Assembly: GCF_000143415.4 (NCBI RefSeq)
Contig: NW_003314346.1
Location: forward strand, 778,589 to 822,832
Length of the DNA stretch: 44,244 nt
Source of the DNA: Selaginella moellendorffii
Taxonomy: Eukaryota > Plantae > Lycopodiophyta
Direction of reading: 5' to 3'
Shown here: positions 2,749 to 12,325 of the stretch, in pieces
Layout of the letters: each line of letters begins with the position of its first letter
Numbering within the stretch: position 1 is the stretch's first letter
The notes under the pieces: model-generated
What the model was told of the DNA's origin: nothing
Seen by the model: only the letters and a program-made list of their open reading frames with translations
The model's database searches: none
Translations under genes and position numbers: made by a program

Positions 2749-3142
2749 TGTTAAGATCCTATCCCTTACACCCTAAGCCAACTGGCTAAAGGGGTGATCA
2801 CTTGATTGTAGGGCCCTTTCCTTATCCTATTATCCTGATCTGGTGCCTAACAATCCTCCCCCTCGTCAGGGAATGATCGTCCACGATCATACTTAGGCCA
2901 CCTTCCCGTCACCATGGTCCTTCTCTTAGGGTCTACCAAACCTTGGTTCTCCCTCTAGATCCACCATGTTGAATATTCCTTTCAAATATTCCTGCCCCAC
3001 TCGTCAACCACGAGAATCGAACTAGGCTCCGATACCAATGTTAGGATCCTATCCCTTACACCCTAAGCCAACTGGCTAAAGAGGTGATCACTTGATTGTA
3101 GGGCCCTTTCCTTATCCTATTATCCTGACCTGGTGCCTAACA
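2749..3142 (-). mobile_element. TRIM-1 (terminal-repeat retrotransposon in miniature), 394 bp, complete
   Basis: 104-bp LTRs at 2749-2852 and 3039-3142 (TG...CA, 3 mismatches). 5-bp TSD ATTGG at 2744-2748 and 3143-3147. tRNA-Met(i) PBS (TGGTATCGGAGC on minus, 3026-3037). PPT on minus next to 2853. No coding capacity. Confidence 0.95.
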
Positions 3143-3557
3143 ATTGGGAACGAAGAAGTCAAACACGGCACTAAAAGAGACAACCACGTTGTAACTGAGG
3201 ACACGGCACTGAAAAGAAACAACCGTACGAAAGAAGAAAGCCTACTTTGTTGTGAGAATGCTCGCTTTAGTGATTTCAAGGATCCCACGGCCATATTCTC
3301 CCATGGGAAAATTGGTCCAAATGGTAATAGTCTTGAATTTCTCTGTCAAAAATCTATTGCTGTTTTCCAGTATCACACTATGCATCCAGGACTAGGTGAG
3401 AACGTTCACTTTGATCATTCCGTTCAAAGTCATGTGGCGATACTCTAAGACCCAGGTTTTTCCAAAGAGCCTTTGAAAGCACTTTCAAGGCTGCAAAATA
3501 TATATGATATGGTAAGACTTGAACCATTCATTATTCATTTCTTGCTGTTTCTTTCAA

Positions 3558-5804
3558 ATGGATGCGTGGAAGTTACTTGCTGTTTTCTTACTTTCTATCA
3601 GGCTCGTCGATCATGCAGATGCTGGAGATTTAGAAGTTGAAGCACTCTTGAATTTTAGGAAATCTGTACATGATCCTTTATTGTCGCTGAATAGCTGGAA
3701 CAGAGGAACAGATGTTTGCCAATGGAATGGTATCAATTGTTCCTCAGCACTGCCAGGCCAGATTTCTAGCATACAGCTCAACGATCTCTCACTTTCAGGA
3801 CCTCTTCCGATTTTTACAATCCAAGCCCTACCTCAGCTACGCAACTTTTCTGTTTCAGGGAACAACCTCACAGAAATCAACATATCCTCTTCGCAGGAAT
3901 GCTCTCTGGAGGTTCTTGACTTGTCAAGGAACCATTTCACTGGGGATTTTCTCGACACTCTTACTCTTTCATGCAAAGGCATGAGGATTTTGAACTTCTC
4001 ACACAACAAGCTACAACACATTTCAGTGAAAAGATCAATTGGGAATTCAATGGTTTCCGTCGATCTATCCTACAACGAAATGAGTGGTTCAATGCCTTCT
4101 TCTTTCTTCACATCATGCAAGAGCTTGCAGTTTCTAGACGTTTCGAGCAATCAGCTGGTTGGAGAGATCCCTGAAGATATGTTCAAAAACTGCAAAAGTC
4201 TACGACATCTTAATGTTTCATCTAACTTCTTCACAACATTTCGGATTGAGCATTGTACTAGTCTGCAGGAGTTGGACGTCTCGTTTAACAACATTTCTGA
4301 AACAGTTTTTTGGAACGATTGTGATGCTTTGAAGGTGCTCAACCTGTCAGATAATCACTTCTCTGGACCATTTCTCTCGGTATTTGCCAATCGAAGTTTA
4401 CCTCAGGTTTTCAAGTCCCTGAAGGTTCTTCGAGCCGACCACAACAGTTTCACGGGTGAACTCCCTACAGTTCCTCAAACCCTCGAGGCTCTAGACTTGA
4501 GCTGCAACATGTTCATCAGTAGCAACACAAACATCTGCCTCCTAAACTCCAGACTCGAGTCTTTGGTGTTGGTATACAACAGATTGCATGGTCCGGTTTT
4601 GAGCTTTCACTGTGATAACCTACAAATGCTCGATCTGAGTCTCAACTCCATGACAGGATCACTTCCAGAGGATATATGCAGCAGACTTCCAAAGCTTCAA
4701 CACCTCATCCTTTGGGGCAACAATCTCGAAGGCAGGATACCACCTACAATCGGCGACTGCAGTGAGTTGGTGACCCTGCATCTCAGTCACAACAATCTCT
4801 CCGGTGTTATACCAGAGGAGATATCTCGCTTGAAGAAAATGTACACGCTAGTTCTTAGCAACAACATGCTATCTGGATCAATCCCGGCATCTGTGGTACA
4901 GATACCAAGTCTTCGAGGTCTTCTACTTGGGCACAACAAGCTAGAGGGTGGTCTTCCAGTGGAGCTAAAAAACACCAGCAATCTAATCCAGCTTTCACTG
5001 AACGACAACCAGATGGCGGGAGAAATTCCAAGCTGGGTCGGCTGCTCAGTTAAAGAGACGCGGTATAATAATGATGTAACATTCCCCTACTTGATGGTGT
5101 TGCTGTTCAACATAGAGCCATCCATCTGCAAAGGTTACAACGAGGCCATGTTCATACTCCAGGGGATACGTTTCCATGAGTTTGAGCAACTTCCCATTGC
5201 AACCAGATGCCAAACTTGGTTCTACCTAGCACCTCCGGGTTTCAACATTTATTTAACTCCAAATCATACTAGCCACTGGTGCATCGATATCTCATTCAAC
5301 AGCTTCACAGGAACAATCCCAACAGAATTCCGTGCGACTCAGAATTTGTATTGGCTGAACCTTGCACACAACTTGCTCACAGGGGCTATTCCTTCCACAA
5401 TGGGCAACCTCAAGAACATTGAGTGGCTAGATCTCTCACAAAACCAGCTCGAATCACAGATCCCGGGCTCGCTTGCCGACCTCACCTTTTTGAAGTACTT
5501 CAACATCTCACACAACAGGCTTCTTGGACGGATTCCACAGGCAGGGCAGCTTCCAGTTTTCCCAGCAAGCAGCTACGAAGGAAATCCGGGGCTGTGTGGC
5601 ATCCCACTTGCAGAATGTCAACGTGCTGCTCCTGATGACCATAATTTGGATAATCATTCTGGTGGGAAGGATGAAGATGGAAGGATGCTGGCTGGCATTG
5701 TTGCTGCTGTTGTTTCATGTGTTTTATGGAGCTGTGCAGTATTCTTCAGCAAGAGTTGGGAAAGATTACTTCAACGGGTTTTGATGTCTTGGTTATATTA
5801 TTGA
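3558..5804 (+). CDS. LRR receptor-like protein (no kinase), 748 aa, with BRI1/BRL-like island domain
   Basis: Uninterrupted ORF from ATG 3558. Signal peptide, LRRNT cap (ALLNFRKS..DP..L.SW....C.W.GINC), many plant LxxLxLxxNxLxGxIP repeats, a non-LRR island at ~5040-5282, 4 further LRRs, GNPGLCG cap, acidic juxtamembrane, TM helix and an ~18-aa tail. Confidence 0.92.
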   Translation: MDAWKLLAVFLLSIRLVDHADAGDLEVEALLNFRKSVHDPLLSLNSWNRGTDVCQWNGINCSSALPGQISSIQLNDLSLSGPLPIFTIQALPQLRNFSVSGNNLTEINISSSQECSLEVLDLSRNHFTGDFLDTLTLSCKGMRILNFSHNKLQHISVKRSIGNSMVSVDLSYNEMSGSMPSSFFTSCKSLQFLDVSSNQLVGEIPEDMFKNCKSLRHLNVSSNFFTTFRIEHCTSLQELDVSFNNISETVFWNDCDALKVLNLSDNHFSGPFLSVFANRSLPQVFKSLKVLRADHNSFTGELPTVPQTLEALDLSCNMFISSNTNICLLNSRLESLVLVYNRLHGPVLSFHCDNLQMLDLSLNSMTGSLPEDICSRLPKLQHLILWGNNLEGRIPPTIGDCSELVTLHLSHNNLSGVIPEEISRLKKMYTLVLSNNMLSGSIPASVVQIPSLRGLLLGHNKLEGGLPVELKNTSNLIQLSLNDNQMAGEIPSWVGCSVKETRYNNDVTFPYLMVLLFNIEPSICKGYNEAMFILQGIRFHEFEQLPIATRCQTWFYLAPPGFNIYLTPNHTSHWCIDISFNSFTGTIPTEFRATQNLYWLNLAHNLLTGAIPSTMGNLKNIEWLDLSQNQLESQIPGSLADLTFLKYFNISHNRLLGRIPQAGQLPVFPASSYEGNPGLCGIPLAECQRAAPDDHNLDNHSGGKDEDGRMLAGIVAAVVSCVLWSCAVFFSKSWERLLQRVLMSWLYY

Positions 5805-6229
5805 GTTAAATTCAAACTGTAGTCAATAAAAGTGAAGATAATGTAGTCTATAAAAGTGAATACAAACTTTCAAGATTTCTAGCTTACATACTTGCATTAG
5901 CAATGGTCATATGAGTGGTTTAGCAATGAAGAGCTTGTTGCTGATTTGCATTAATCCCTACTTTTTCATGTCATGTGTTCATGACTTTGTTTCTGTACTA
6001 TATGTAAGGATATAGATATGCATTAGTTGCATTTTCACTGTTGACACATCCAAAATATAACACAATCTCCGAGGTTCCAGAAAATCTAACTTGTCCAGGC
6101 TCAATTTCTTTAGCAATTAACACATATGTCAAAACTTGATTTTTATACTTACCCATCTTTATCTACTGTTCTCTTCTTAGGTTGCTTTAGTGCTAATAGT
6201 CAAGATGAAAGATAGTATATAGTGTCTTT

Positions 6230-9200
6230 GCATGAACTACAAAAGATTGAATGATAAGATACTGAAAAATATGTTCTCAATCCCTCATATCAATGATTTG
6301 GTGTATTGTGGTGCTTGCTACTTTTCAAAGATTGATTTGAGATAATGATATCATCAAATTATTATTAAGCTGGAGGATGTTCCAAAGACAATATTTCAAA
6401 CAAGGACAAGTCACTACAAATTATTGGTGATGCCATTTGGTTTGACAAATATGCTTGCAACTTTTCAAAGGTTTAATGAATCAAATTTTGCAACCTTACT
6501 TGGGGAATTTTGTGATTGATTATTTTGATTGTAGTGCACCTTATCTCTTTCCCTTTAAGCCAACTGGAAAAGGGGCAATTGTTTGATGAGAGAGCCTTTA
6601 GTGGCTATTTTATTTCTATTTATCCCTCAAAGTTCCAAGGATCCATGATGACAGTATATCTAAATCTCATCCTATGATCACATGCGCTACACTCACCCCC
6701 CCTTTAAAGATGTTAATGTCCTTATTGACTATTGACTAACAACCTTTACTAAGCCAAGGGGAACCAACACCTCCATTTCCGCATTGAATCTATTAATCTT
6801 TCCATTATGTAAACTGGCTATTCCATGTGAGGCAATTAGTCATCCACCCGTACCACAGTCCTATGGTGGATACTTTCGTCCGTGGATACTCCACACAAGA
6901 GGAAAGACATATGCATAGATGCCCAATACGTACGATTTCAAATCTAGAGGTAGGAATATACCTTGCTCAAGGGTATATTGTATTTTTTAAGTAACCACTA
7001 ATCAATAGGAATCAAACTTGTGTCATTTGCTCCGATACCACATGTAGCGCACTTTATCTCTCTCCCCTTAAGTCAACTGGGTAATTGTTTGATGAAAGAG
7101 CTCTTAGTGGCTATTTTATCCCTATTTATCCCCCAAGGTTCCAAAGATCCATGGTGACAGTATATCCAAATCTCATCCCATGATCACATACACTATATTG
7201 ATGATATCTTGGTATTTAGTGTTACCTTAGAAAAGCATGAAATGCATGTGAAACAAGTGTTGGAATTCTTGAAAGACAATAGGAAATTGGATATCTTAAG
7301 CATTTGATTTTAATGCATGGATTGAGAGTTGATCTAGCAAAGATCAAGGTTGTGGTTGAGTAGTATATATTGCCTACTCCCTTAACTAATCTTCTCCAAA
7401 ACACATTGAATCATACTATTATATATAATTGGGATGCAAAATGTCAAATGGCATTTACACAGTGGAAATAGTATTGTATTTCTACTTTGGTGTTGAATAT
7501 CTTTGATTCTAAGAAGTCACTTGTGGTTGAGATAGATGCAAATGACATTGCTATTGGAGTAGTATTGTTTTAAATTGGGCATATTCTTGACACAACAGAA
7601 TTAGCTGACTTGTGACAAGGAGTTATATGATATAGTTAATGCTGTGAAGAAATGATGATATTATTTATATGGATTGGAGTTCTATATAGATTTAGACTAT
7701 TAGTCTCTCCAATATTTTATTTATCAAACAAATCTTCAAGACCACTTTGCATGTTGGTAAGAGTTCTTGTAAGAAATGTTAGTTAAGATCCAATATCGAT
7801 GAGGGGTGACAATAAGGTGGTTGATGCATTATCTAGAATAGTGAATTATATCTCATTTGTGAAATTATATAGTGATCTTTTGGATGAGCTTAAGGAGTTT
7901 GTTGACTTCAACTCCTTTATCGTTAATATGCACATGAAGATTTGAAGAGGGATGCCTCTATTGTTGTGAAGCCCCGACAATTTTATGTCATTTGAGATAT
8001 AAGATGGAATCTTGGTGAAGAAGGGTTATACAGTGGTTCCTTATGTTGATAAGCTCATCAAAAGGATTTTGGTGGAGTGTCATGATATGCCAAGTGTTGG
8101 GCATCCAAGGGTATTAAGGACGTATGTGTTGGTAAAAACACATTTTTTTTGGCTTGGGATGAAGTTAGATGTAGAAAAGTACATATACAATTGTTTGACC
8201 TGCTAGGCAATTAAATCTGATCACTAGAAGCTCATTGACCTTTACCATCCTCTATATATACTTGAGCATAAGTGGGATAACATCTTGATGGACTTTATCA
8301 TTAATTTGCCCAAAACCTTTCAAGAAAATGATATTATTTGGATTGATATGGATTGTTTGATGAAAATTGGCTCACTTTTTCCCATGAAGACAAATGTTAA
8401 AGCTTTTGATCTTCCTTAGTTATTTGTAAACTAATTATTTAGTCTGTATGGTTTGCTAGGTGATATTATGAGTGATTGGGATCTCAAATTCATGTCAAAG
8501 TTCTAGCAAATAGTATTTGAAAAATTAGAGACTAAGTTGAACATGAGTAGAGGTGAGCATCCACAATTTGATAGATAGACAAAGGGCATAAATCAACTAT
8601 TGGAAGATATGCTATGATCATTTGTGGGGAGCTTGACTAGGCAAGGTGTATGGGAGAAGTATTTACCTTTGCTTCAGTTTGCTCACAATAGACTCAATAA
8701 TTAGCTATTGACATATCCTTATTTATGGTGATATATAGCTTCAAGCCATGGTCTCTTGTGGGTTTGAGTTTAGCTTTAGATCAAGTGCTTTTTGCTTGTG
8801 ATTTCCTAGAGGATATACAAGACAAACTTAAGTTGGCAAAGTTGAATATAAGGCAAACTCAAGATCAAGACAAGAGATTAACTGATGAGTATTATCATCA
8901 TTAGGAGTAAAAAGTTGGTGATAAGGTTTTTCTTAAGTTGTCTAATATGCTCAGGTCTCTCAAAGGAGGTAGTAATATTAAGTTGTCTTTGTAGTATTAT
9001 AGGCTTTGTGCAATTTTGCAATGTGTGGGAGATCTTCCTTACATTTTAGACTTGCTAGCTAGCTCTAAAATTCATTTGAAGTTCCATGTGAGCAAGTTAA
9101 AAACATGTTCATACTTTAGCAATATCTTAGATTAGCTCATCATCCAGGTTCTAGAGATTGATGCTGAGAAAGCTAGTTTAGCATATATTCTTGTTCAAAG

Positions 9201-9357: not shown

Positions 9358-9853
9358 TAATTTTTATACCATATAAGTCATTTTACTCTTGTTATTTCTC
9401 TTGTTTTTATGACTGTATTATCATACTTGCCATTTCCCTCTATATTTACTGGAGGTATATTTGGCCGTATTTGCTTCTTATGGGATTCAAACCNNNNNNN
9501 NNNNNNNNNNNNNNNNNNNNNNNNNNNNNNNNNNNNNNNNNNNNNNNNNNNNNNNNNNNNNNNNNNNNNNNNNNNNNNNNNNNNNNNNNNNNNTCGAACC
9601 CAAGATCTACCATGCATGTGCATATATACATGGGCATCCAAGATTGGTATGGACCCATGCCTAAATTAGTTTCCTGGATTAGCTCAAGAATTGATCAGAT
9701 TAGTTTCCAAGGACTCTATAAAAGTAGAGTTTTTAGGACTTTGTATTTAGAGTGTTCAACATAAACTTTTTTTCCTTAATCTTTTCCTTTGTATTTGTCT
9801 TTTGATTTTGTCTTTTTCTTATCATCTCTTTCTCTCACTGACGAGTTCCTAAC
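9358..9853 (+). repeat. Probable LTR sequence, interrupted by an N gap
   Basis: Starts right after the PPT, contains TATAAAA at ~9717 and a T-rich U5-like tract, and ends in ...CCTAACA just before a gag remnant. No second copy is present to confirm it. Confidence 0.45.
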
Positions 9854-11613: not shown

Positions 11614-12325
11614 ATGGATGTCAATTGTGGCAGTTCTAGTGATTGCTGAGTTATTTGCTCCAGGCTTGGGTTTCCAGTGTCCAAAAGCCATGTTCTGGTT
11701 TGAGGATTCTATTGTCGATACAGAGAATGTTCAAGCAGCAGCTCCATTTATTAGTGCCGCAGAGTATAAGCCTTATGGCATGACTTTCTTCAGTAAGCCA
11801 TCGAAGAGATACTCGGATGGTCGTGTGGTTGTCGACTTTTTTGGTAATTGTATGTGTTGATTAAACAGCATTTGATGTTATTTGTGAATGTTTTTGCAGC
11901 GGAGGCTTTTGAGTATGATAGATTCCTGGATCCCATTTTGCAAAGTATTAACTTGAATTATGCCAATGGGGTGAATTTTACGGTCTCTGGAGCGACTGCT
12001 TTGAACACCACCCTCGAAGTCCCACTGTACCTTCTAGTTCAGATTGACCAGTTTCTGAGGTTCAAGCAAGATGCTTATGACAGCAGGCATGGTAAAGGTA
12101 ATGATTCTTCTCAAACTTTGCAAAGGTAGTGTCATTCATGGATTCCTCTGTAGGGATGCAAAAGCTAGTTCTTTATTATCATCATCTAAAGACTGCTTTG
12201 TATGTGGTTGGCATAAGTACTAACGATCTTCTCAATTCCTACTTGTTGAAGCATAGAAGCCCTGAGAATGTAACAGTTGTGGTTGTTCCATACGTTGTGA
12301 GAGCCATCTTTCACGCATTATAGAT
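11614..12325 (+). pseudogene. GDSL esterase/lipase, 5' half only
   Basis: FWFEDSIVDTEN (mutated block I), PYGMTFF..PS.RYSDGR, GVNF.VSGATA (block II) and STNDLL (block III). Short introns. The C-terminal DxxH region is absent. Confidence 0.85.

What the first reader, a model, noticed from the sequence alone, without database searches (positions are those of the whole stretch)
3558..5804. Kinase-less receptor-like protein with a BRI1/BRL-type steroid-binding island domain
Seen: an intact RLP with an island followed by exactly 4 LRRs, reading ...FNIEPSICKGYNEAMFILQGIRFHEFEQLPIATRCQTWFY...NHTSHWCIDISFN. Recalled: the Arabidopsis BRI1 island reads KECHGAGNLLEFQGIRSEQLNRLSTRNPC...NNGSMMFLDMSYN. The C-x-G, QGIR and second Cys are all conserved, with the same 13-residue R-to-C spacing. 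The C-cap (GQLPVFPASSYEGNPGLCGIPL..C) is also BRI1/BRL-like. The protein ends in an RLP-type acidic stalk, TM helix and short tail, with AATAAA after the stop and no kinase downstream. Canonical BRI1 receptors are generally regarded as absent from lycophytes. Inference: this may be a BRI1-class ectodomain deployed as an RLP (signalling through an adaptor kinase, or acting as a decoy), which bears on how the brassinosteroid receptor arose by ectodomain/kinase shuffling.
Basis: partly seen in the sequence, partly recalled or inferred. Interest (0 to 1): 0.85.

Follow-up and report, generated by a model that had tools for sequence, protein, structure and literature searches.

The report
Kinase-less BRI1-like receptor in Selaginella
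A spikemoss (Selaginella moellendorffii) gene encodes a transcribed, intact cell-surface protein whose outer part descends from the plant steroid-receptor (BRI1-like) family but which has no kinase and lacks the residues that family needs to bind the steroid, so it corrects the statement that Selaginella has no BRI1-like genes but is probably not a classical steroid receptor.

Summary
Window 3558-5804 (+) is an intact, intronless 748-codon ORF. It encodes a signal peptide, LRRNT, about 18 LRRs, a 79-residue island, exactly 4 LRRs, a C-cap, an acidic stalk, a TM helix and a 17-residue tail. AATAAA lies at 5825-5830, and no kinase is found anywhere in the 44 kb.

The organism is Selaginella moellendorffii. 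NCBI auto-names the gene 'BRI1-like 3' on a chimeric model.

The ectodomain is BRI1-like:
- It is colinear with BRL3 and a fern BRL across the island.
- An island-only profile comparison gives P about 1e-3.
- It groups with BRLs at 100/99 support, as sister to fern and seed-plant BRLs and apart from 17 RLPs. Support is 93/85 without the island columns.

It belongs to a small Selaginella-only paralog family with the same short tail. dN/dS is about 0.3, and the gene is transcribed.

'Steroid-binding' is not supported. Trp564 and Lys/Arg601 are invariant in 51 BRLs but are Q/H/L and F/I here, and Pfam's island model does not match.

BRL-like kinase-less RLPs were already described (Ngou 2024), so this is a new member of a known kind. 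It does contradict papers stating that Selaginella lacks BRL or island genes. The scan flagged two sister loci in this genome.

The parts
3511..3600 (+). Optional GT..AG intron that covers the start codon and the signal-peptide codons. When spliced, an upstream ATG at 3503 reads M-I-W then LVDHADAG..., giving a protein without a signal peptide.
   Evidence: joint 3510->3601 in one X1 RNA contig at depth 41. Unspliced contigs across the same place have depth 26-29. The spliced form matches the N-terminus of NCBI model P0002.
3558..5804 (+). Intronless coding sequence of the 748-aa kinase-less BRL-type receptor-like protein, stop codon included.
   Evidence: 100% identical to the matching part of S. 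moellendorffii P0001. RNA contigs cover 3294-5843 continuously.
3558..3626 (+). Signal peptide (about residues 1-23). The start MDxW(K/R)LLA is conserved in the paralogs.
   Evidence: Sequence. No signal-peptide predictor was run.
3627..3761 (+). N-terminal cap (LRRNT_2), with the Cys54/Cys61 pair.
   Evidence: Pfam PF08263, E = 5.5e-11, residues 26-62.
3762..5042 (+). About 18 plant-type LRRs (residues 69-495), colinear with BRL LRRs but roughly 2-3 repeats shorter than BRL3 in the middle.
   Evidence: Q478 (nt 4989-4991) occupies the position of BRI1 Trp564.
5043..5279 (+). Island domain (residues 496-574). It keeps the BRL-type scaffold (C524, G536-I-R538, Q-L-P, C551) but has diverged pocket residues.
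   Evidence: dN/dS is 0.17-0.38. It has no Kx5Y or Yx8KG RLP-type motif. AF2 pLDDT is only 54-74.
5280..5561 (+). Four LRRs after the island (the C3 region, residues 575-668). In BRI1, PSKR1 and RLPs this is the SERK co-receptor docking region.
   Evidence: up to 54% identity to BRL2 C3. dN/dS is 0.23-0.26. The role is inferred from PMC10834447.
5562..5618 (+). C-terminal cap, GQLPVFPASSYEGNPGLCGIPLAEC (residues 664-687), BRL-like.
5619..5684 (+). Acidic extracellular juxtamembrane stalk (6 D/E in 22 residues).
5685..5750 (+). Transmembrane helix with small-xxx-small motifs (AGIVA, GIVAA, AAVVS) but no strict GxxxG.
5751..5804 (+). 17-residue cytoplasmic tail plus stop codon. Tails of the same type (FFSKRWEALLKRLI) end the paralogs.
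5825..5830 (+). AATAAA poly(A) signal. RNA contigs end at about 5843.

Best explanation
This is a lycophyte descendant of the BRI1-like (BRL) receptor lineage that has lost its kinase. It persists in Selaginella moellendorffii as a small family of expressed receptor-like proteins under selective constraint.

Shown here:
- The whole ectodomain, island included, is BRL-type.
- The family is sister to fern and seed-plant BRLs.
- The protein ends in an acidic stalk, a single TM helix and a short tail conserved among paralogs.
- No kinase is encoded nearby, and no evidence was found of splicing to one.

Inferred mechanism:
- The secreted-pathway isoform sits in the plasma membrane.
- It binds a small ligand in the groove between the island and the inner LRR surface.
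- It recruits a SERK co-receptor through the conserved last four LRRs.
- Lacking a kinase, it either signals through a partner kinase (SOBIR1-type adaptor, as LRR-RLPs do) or sequesters ligand or SERK as a modulator.

Two pocket positions are invariant in all 51 BRLs compared here (Trp564 and Lys/Arg601 in BRI1 numbering), and both are replaced. The ligand is therefore probably not brassinolide or castasterone bound in the BRI1 manner.
For: Identity:
- 100% match to S. moellendorffii proteins.

BRL homology:
- phmmer aligns 24-226 and 330-690 colinearly with BRL3, through the island.
- A fern BRL ectodomain gives one 664-aa HSP, E = 9e-81.
- The family profile crosses the island only with BRI1 and BRL1-3 among PDB chains. 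PSKR1 and RXEG1 match only after the island.
- Every ectodomain segment scores best against BRLs.
- Island-only hhalign gives P = 0.0011, above all 300 column shuffles.
- The ML tree gives Sm+BRL at 100/99*, with Sm sister to all fern and seed-plant BRLs. RLPs form a separate clade at 97/96*. Sm+BRL stays at 93/85 without the island columns.
- The top 22 Foldseek hits are all BRI1-family ectodomains, E 1e-43 to 1e-33. The next hit, HAESA, is at 6e-30.

RLP architecture and function:
- No kinase is found in 44 kb.
- The paralogs end in the same TM helix and tail.
- dN/dS is 0.32-0.35 overall, 0.17-0.38 in the island and 0.23-0.26 in C3.
- RNA contigs cover 3294-5843 and none cover 5900-8890. 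One contig runs unspliced through the stop codon.

Pocket divergence: read against the mutational data in PMC13481262.

SERKs and SOBIR1 occur across embryophytes (PMC10834447), and BAK1-like genes occur in Selaginella (PMC3862569).
Against: - No binding, localisation or interaction data exist. SERK docking and adaptor use are inferred by analogy.
- Pfam's island model PF20141 does not match, although fern and angiosperm BRLs match it.
- The island is only moderately confident in the AF2 model (pLDDT 54-74). That model used BRLs in its alignment. With paralogs alone the island did not fold.
- The tree lacks PSKR, PSY1R, EMS1, NILR1 and bryophyte BRLs, because no tool-derived sequences of them were available.
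- A substantial share of transcripts in one run splice out the signal peptide.
- One paralog (L002) has an N-terminal frameshift.
- Two 2026 RNA-seq runs show no reads on the gene.
- The TM helix has no strict GxxxG, so SOBIR1-type pairing is uncertain.
Confidence: 0.7

Rival explanations
1. It is a working brassinosteroid (or BR-precursor) sensor or decoy. The BRL-type pocket still binds a Selaginella steroid. The protein then either signals with SERK plus another kinase or buffers the hormone. This would fill the gap left by the reported absence of BRI1 in a plant that responds to BRs.
For: - The ectodomain is BRL-derived, with the island scaffold and hydrophobic pocket positions kept (M513 equals Met557 of BRL2; an aromatic residue lies at or next to the Tyr642 position).
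- BRL2, long thought a non-binder, binds C28 BRs, and the pocket tolerates many substitutions (PMC13481262).
- Selaginella grows in response to BR and makes CYP90 enzymes, but no receptor is known (PMC3862569).
- The island is under purifying selection.
Against: - Trp564 is Q/H/L/L here. It is invariant in 51 BRLs, and W564H cut binding about 100-fold and phenocopied a null.
- Lys/Arg601 is F/I, and K601L compromised SERK1 binding.
- The positions of Met657 and Phe658 are W/C or L/A.
- Pfam's island model does not match.
- There is no kinase to feed the BSK/BIN2 pathway.
Confidence: 0.13
2. It is a decaying remnant: truncated copies of a former BRL kinase gene that are transcribed but no longer make a useful receptor.
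For: - The kinase is missing, and degenerate retrotransposon pieces start about 500 bp after the stop codon.
- One paralog is frameshifted.
- A splice form removes the signal peptide.
- Expression is absent in some RNA-seq runs.
- The stem branch is long (0.92).
Against: - Intact ORFs of 748 and 766 codons exist at two dispersed loci, and the other haplotype's model (P0002) is 99% identical over the region compared.
- dN/dS is about 0.3, with the lowest values in the island and C3.
- The TM helix and tail are conserved between paralogs that differ by dS 0.44-0.66. The kinase-less form is therefore old and has been maintained.
Confidence: 0.12
3. It is an ordinary immune-type LRR-RLP of the ID+4LRR clade, and its island only resembles BRI1 by chance.
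For: - ID+4LRR, an acidic stalk and a short tail are the generic RLP layout (PMC10834447).
- RLPs gave the highest summed scores in the first database search.
Against: - Those scores were sums over many repeats.
- The tree separates 17 RLPs (97/96*) from Sm+BRL (100/99*).
- The N-terminal LRRs score 92 (median) against BRLs versus 62 against RLPs.
- The pattern C-x-[GA]...G-[IVL]-R matched the island of no RLP or non-BRL kinase receptor among the 239 proteins.
- The island lacks the Kx5Y and Yx8KG motifs found in more than 75% of RLP islands.
Confidence: 0.03

Closest known systems
BRI1-like receptor kinases (BRI1, BRL1, BRL2, BRL3; LRR-RLK subgroup Xb), especially fern and seed-plant BRLs
   Same: - The LRR ectodomain is colinear, at 33-37% identity over about 660-700 residues.
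- An island of about 70-79 residues lies before the last four LRRs, with the same Cys pair, G-I-R, Q-x-P and spacing.
- The cap is BRL-type.
- The coding sequence is intronless.
- The family is the phylogenetic sister of these receptors.
   Different: - There is no juxtamembrane or kinase domain.
- It has about 22 rather than 24-25 LRRs.
- Trp564 and Lys/Arg601, invariant in BRLs, are replaced.
- Pfam PF20141 does not match.
- The stalk is acidic and the tail short.
- The stem branch is long.
BRL-like LRR-RLPs reported by Ngou et al. 2024 (Nat Commun 15:308, PMC10834447)
   Same: These are also kinase-less membrane proteins whose ectodomains fall in the BRI1/BRL ectodomain clade. Their function is unknown.
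   Different: Those are described as highly similar to BRL1/BRL3 and as keeping the BR-binding residues. This family is a deep lycophyte branch with a diverged pocket. It is not discussed in that paper, although the species was in its data set.
Immune LRR-RLPs of the ID+4LRR clade (Cf-9, RLP23, EIX2, RXEG1) working with SOBIR1 and SERKs
   Same: - The overall layout: island, four LRRs, acidic stalk, single TM helix and short tail.
- A likely need for partner kinases.
   Different: - It sits in a separate clade.
- The island is not alignable.
- It has no Kx5Y or Yx8KG motif.
- It has no strict GxxxG in the TM helix.
PSKR1/PSY1R and their RLP counterparts (e.g. AtRLP3)
   Same: An Xb-type ID+4LRR ectodomain. 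AtRLP3/PSY1R is a precedent for a kinase receptor and a kinase-less twin sharing one ectodomain type.
   Different: PSKR1 aligns only after the island. No PSKR sequences could be placed in the tree.

Membership tests
BRI1/BRL receptor kinases | LRR ectodomain homologous and colinear with BRI1/BRL, grouping with them in a tree | tested here: met
   Tree support is 100/99*, and 93/85 without the island columns. PSKR, EMS1 and NILR1 were not in the tree.
BRI1/BRL receptor kinases | Island domain of BRL type inserted before the last four LRRs | tested here: met
   Position and length were confirmed. C524, G536, I537 and C551 are invariant with 51 BRLs. hhalign on the island alone gives P = 0.0011, with 0 of 300 shuffles reaching the score. 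However, Pfam PF20141 gives no match and phmmer on the island alone gives none.
BRI1/BRL receptor kinases | Cytoplasmic Ser/Thr kinase domain | tested here: not met
   The ORF stops 17 residues after the TM helix. tblastn finds no kinase in the 44 kb. RNA ends at about 5843. The paralogs also lack kinase Pfam domains.
BRI1/BRL receptor kinases | Conserved steroid-pocket residues (Trp564, Tyr/Phe599, Lys/Arg601, Leu615) | tested here: not met
   W564 is Q/H/L/L against W in 51 of 51 BRLs. K/R601 is F/F/I/I against R in 51 of 51. Position 599 is L/L/F/F, and L615 is M/V/V/V. Functional weight comes from PMC13481262.
BRI1/BRL receptor kinases | Binds brassinosteroids and then a SERK | not testable with these tools
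   This needs binding assays on the recombinant ectodomain.
LRR receptor-like proteins (ID+4LRR type) | Signal peptide, LRR ectodomain, single TM helix, short tail, no kinase | tested here: met
   The signal peptide was judged by eye and by conservation in the paralogs.
LRR receptor-like proteins (ID+4LRR type) | Negatively charged extracellular juxtamembrane region | tested here: met
   6 D/E against 3 K/R in 22 residues. The paralogs have D/E-rich stalks too.
LRR receptor-like proteins (ID+4LRR type) | GxxxG motif(s) in the TM helix for SOBIR1 pairing | tested here: inconclusive
   Only small-xxx-small motifs are present (AGIVA, GIVAA, AAVVS).
LRR receptor-like proteins (ID+4LRR type) | RLP-type island motifs Kx5Y or Yx8KG, and placement in the RLP clade | tested here: not met
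   No such motif occurs in any of the five family members. The tree places the family with BRLs, not with the 17 RLPs.
BRL-like LRR-RLPs (Ngou et al. 2024) | Kinase-less protein whose ectodomain lies in the BRI1/BRL ectodomain clade | tested here: met
   The definition is taken from PMC10834447.
BRL-like LRR-RLPs (Ngou et al. 2024) | Retains the residues essential for BR binding | tested here: not met

The most novel reading that the evidence does not exclude
These kinase-less BRL-type proteins are the missing steroid-perception module of Selaginella. They would bind a lycophyte brassinosteroid or related sterol in a remodelled island pocket and signal through SERK plus a separate kinase. This would be an ancient, split-receptor form of steroid sensing in vascular plants.
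Probability: 0.1. Interest if true: 0.85.

Novelty: new member of a known kind. Interest (0 to 1): 0.5.

Why it matters
Papers on brassinosteroid evolution state that Selaginella has no BRI1/BRL homologue and no island domain (PMC3862569, PMC9223546, PMC6744412, PMC4926431). At least some of those screens required a kinase domain or looked only at the closest full-length match.

This locus and its paralogs show that the BRL ectodomain lineage, island included, is present in a lycophyte in kinase-less form. That has three consequences:
- It places the BRL ectodomain in the common ancestor of vascular plants.
- It gives a concrete example of old, maintained kinase loss in the Xb/RLP continuum proposed by Ngou et al. 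2024.
- It supplies testable candidates for how a BR-responsive plant without BRI1 might sense steroids, or for what else a BRL-type pocket can bind.

Tried and rejected
- **Island alone against PDB (phmmer).** Only a chance racemase hit.
- **Pfam at E <= 10 on the island piece.** No PF20141 match.
- **Island-only HMM against 111 fetched proteins.** BRLs took 3 of the top 4 ranks, but at only 3-4 bits.
- **Exhaustive representative search with the 357-position family profile.** It was swamped by giant multi-LRR proteins whose scores sum over repeats. It showed only that nothing outside Selaginella matches the full length above about 490 bits.
- **AF2 with the five paralogs only.** Island pLDDT was below 35, so it was unusable.
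- **TM-scores.** They do not discriminate among LRR solenoids: PSKR1 has the highest TM-score but a much worse Foldseek E-value.
- **Chimera idea (BRL front, RLP back).** Rejected: the C3 and cap segment is at least as close to BRL2s as to the best RLPs, and the cap ends in the BRL-type Cys.
- **NCBI's 1009-aa and 906-aa models.** They replace the signal peptide and join the TM region to downstream retroelement and GDSL-lipase-like ORFs. I treat them as chimeric. An RNA contig runs unspliced through the stop codon. However, one X1 contig ends at 5720, next to the predicted donor, so a minor read-through isoform is not excluded.
- **Island-word search of 5.8 billion proteins.** Only S. moellendorffii proteins were found.
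Full report
**Observation.** The window's longest ORF runs 3519..5804 on the + strand, and the Met at 3558 gives 748 residues. Pfam finds LRRNT_2 and many LRRs but no kinase.

Mapping the repeats gives this layout:
- about 18 LRRs up to residue 495;
- a 79-residue non-LRR island, residues 496-574;
- exactly four LRRs, starting at 574/575, 597, 621 and 645;
- a Cys-capped C-terminal cap;
- an acidic stretch;
- a hydrophobic helix, residues 710-731;
- a 17-residue tail.

AATAAA lies 21 nt after the stop codon.

**Organism and annotation.** The protein is 100% identical to the matching part of Selaginella moellendorffii entries that NCBI names 'receptor-like protein kinase BRI1-like 3' (P0001, 1009 aa; P0002, 906 aa, probably the other haplotype). 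Neither entry has a kinase Pfam domain. Both models replace the signal peptide and join the TM region to downstream ORFs of retroelement or GDSL-lipase type.

There are further S. moellendorffii paralogs at 59-76% identity (P0003-P0008, P0031), and all are kinase-less. Several end in the same TM helix and short tail. Two paralog loci lie on other scaffolds among unrelated genes.

**Is the ectodomain really BRI1-like?** Several independent tests agree.
1. phmmer against PDB aligns residues 24-226 and 330-690 colinearly with BRL3, straight through the island. tblastn with a fern BRL ectodomain gives one 664-residue HSP, E = 9e-81.
2. With a profile of five family members, only BRI1, BRL1, BRL2 and BRL3 chains align across the island. 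PSKR1 and the RLP RXEG1 match only the post-island repeats.
3. Segment by segment (N-terminal LRRs, pre-island LRRs, C3 plus cap), BRLs score as well as or better than RLPs. This holds even though the RLP set had been pre-selected for similarity to this protein.
4. The island alone is too diverged for single-sequence or Pfam detection. A profile-profile comparison of island-only alignments (5 Selaginella, 17 BRLs) aligns 38 columns in register, with P = 0.0011 and score 21.6. The column-shuffled null is 10.7 +/- 2.4, and 0 of 300 shuffles reached the observed score.
5. In a 55-sequence alignment both Cys, the G-I of G-I-R and the following D-x-S-x-N are invariant.
6. An ML tree of the last 360 ectodomain residues was built from 44 sequences under LG+C20. 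It unites the Selaginella family with BRLs at 100/99, as sister to all fern, gymnosperm and angiosperm BRLs (91/92). The 17 RLPs form their own clade at 97/96. Dropping the island columns keeps Sm+BRL at 93/85.
7. An AF2 model built with a BRL-containing alignment has mean pLDDT 87. Its best 22 Foldseek PDB hits are all BRI1-family ectodomains (E 1e-43 to 1e-33), and the next hit, HAESA, is at 6e-30. This last test is partly circular, and the island has only pLDDT 54-74.

Limitation: no tool-derived PSKR, PSY1R, EMS1, NILR1 or bryophyte BRL sequences were available for the tree.

**Is it really an RLP, and is it alive?**
- No kinase-like sequence exists anywhere in the 44 kb.
- RNA contigs from two runs cover 3294-5843 and nothing from 5900 to 8890. 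The signal is therefore RNA and not DNA carry-over, and the 3' end fits the AATAAA. One contig crosses the stop codon unspliced.
- Against the two paralog loci, dN/dS is 0.32-0.35 overall, 0.17-0.38 in the island and 0.23-0.26 in the last four LRRs plus cap, at dS 0.44-0.66. The kinase-less form is old and has been maintained.

Caveats:
- One paralog copy is frameshifted near its N-terminus.
- Two deep 2026 RNA-seq runs show no reads on the gene.
- In run X1 a GT..AG intron (3511-3600) that removes the start codon and signal peptide is spliced at depth 41, against 26-29 for the unspliced form.

**Steroid pocket.** I mapped BRI1 positions through the alignment, using the 2026 mutational map of Caregnato et al. 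(PMC13481262).
- **Trp564.** It is W in all 51 BRLs compared but Q478 here, and H, L, L in the paralogs. In BRI1, W564H lowered brassinolide binding about 100-fold and phenocopied a null.
- **Lys601.** It is R in 51 of 51 BRLs but F/F/I/I here. K601L compromised SERK1 binding.
- **Phe/Tyr599.** L/L/F/F here.
- **Leu615.** M/V here.
- **Met657/Phe658.** W-C or L-A here.
- **Tyr597.** Met here, as in BRL2.
- **Tyr642.** An aromatic residue sits at or next to this position.

The scaffold is kept, but the two most conserved pocket positions are not. I therefore do not file the island as 'steroid-binding'. The reported plasticity of the pocket and the newly found BR binding by BRL2 keep a minority chance open.

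**Mechanism (inferred).** The protein is a surface receptor-like protein that binds a small ligand at the interface of the island and the LRR surface. It then recruits a SERK through the C3 repeats, which are the most constrained segment. Output would go through a partner kinase, or the protein would act as a sink for ligand or co-receptor. SERKs and SOBIR1 occur across land plants (PMC10834447), and BAK1-like genes occur in Selaginella (PMC3862569). The TM helix has only small-xxx-small motifs, not GxxxG.

**Comparison with what is known.** Ngou et al. 2024 showed that ID+4LRR RLPs and Xb kinases share ectodomain ancestry. They also reported 'BRL-like LRR-RLPs' of unknown function. Selaginella was among their 350 genomes but is not discussed. 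The kind is therefore known.

What is new is the member: a deep lycophyte branch with a remodelled pocket, in a species for which several papers state that no BRL or island exists. BRLs are reported from some mosses (PMC9223546), and the family is sister to euphyllophyte BRLs. Kinase loss in the Selaginella lineage is therefore more likely than an ancestral RLP state.

An island-word search of 5.8 billion proteins found this island type only in S. moellendorffii. The scan's own index lists two similar first-reader notes on other pieces of this genome, consistent with the paralogs found here.

**Verdict.** The 'BRL ectodomain as an RLP' reading is supported, and the 'steroid-binding' reading is not. 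Secondary kinase loss is favoured over origin by domain shuffling. This is a new member of a known kind, of moderate interest, and directly testable by ectodomain binding assays.

Noticed in passing
window 3503-3601: A 90-nt GT..AG intron lies inside the 5' end of the gene. When retained, ATG 3503 is a 3-codon uORF (M-I-W-stop), and ATG 3558 gives the signal peptide. When spliced, ATG 3503 reads into the mature protein without a signal peptide. Both forms occur in one RNA run (depth 41 against 26-29).
   Followed up: partly
window 3049-3142: A short exon-like block is covered by 2026 RNA-seq reads at 95-99% identity, with loose ends on both sides. It is probably an exon of a repeated or paralogous transcript, unrelated to the receptor ORF, which had no reads in those runs.
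   Followed up: no
window 6290-8210: Degenerate Ty3/gypsy-like pieces lie just downstream of the gene: a reverse-transcriptase-like stretch with stop codons near 6300-6540, and an integrase zinc-finger-like ORF at 8012-8206. GC drops from 0.44 to 0.33. A run of N follows at about 9490-9600.
   Followed up: no
window 11618-12323: Short ORFs look like exons of a GDSL esterase/lipase gene (judged by eye). NCBI's 1009-aa and 906-aa models fuse them to the receptor's TM region. I read those models as chimeric.
   Followed up: partly
L002 10222-12610 (GL377593.1): The closest paralog (79% identity over the last ~355 ectodomain residues) has its N-terminal LRR region in another reading frame relative to the window gene. 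This is either a frameshifted pseudogene copy or an assembly error. Its TM helix and tail are intact.
   Followed up: partly
P0005 and P0031 (paralog gene models): Two database models of paralogs lack the middle of the island, as if an intron had been predicted inside it. No such splice is seen in RNA contigs of the window gene (one contig runs continuously over 4392-5720).
   Followed up: no
runs X2 and X6: RNA runs filed under two other organism labels hold 37-50% of the gene's 31-mers. The one that was laid (X2) matches at about 99% identity. This suggests another accession or haplotype, or mislabelled or mixed samples.
   Followed up: no
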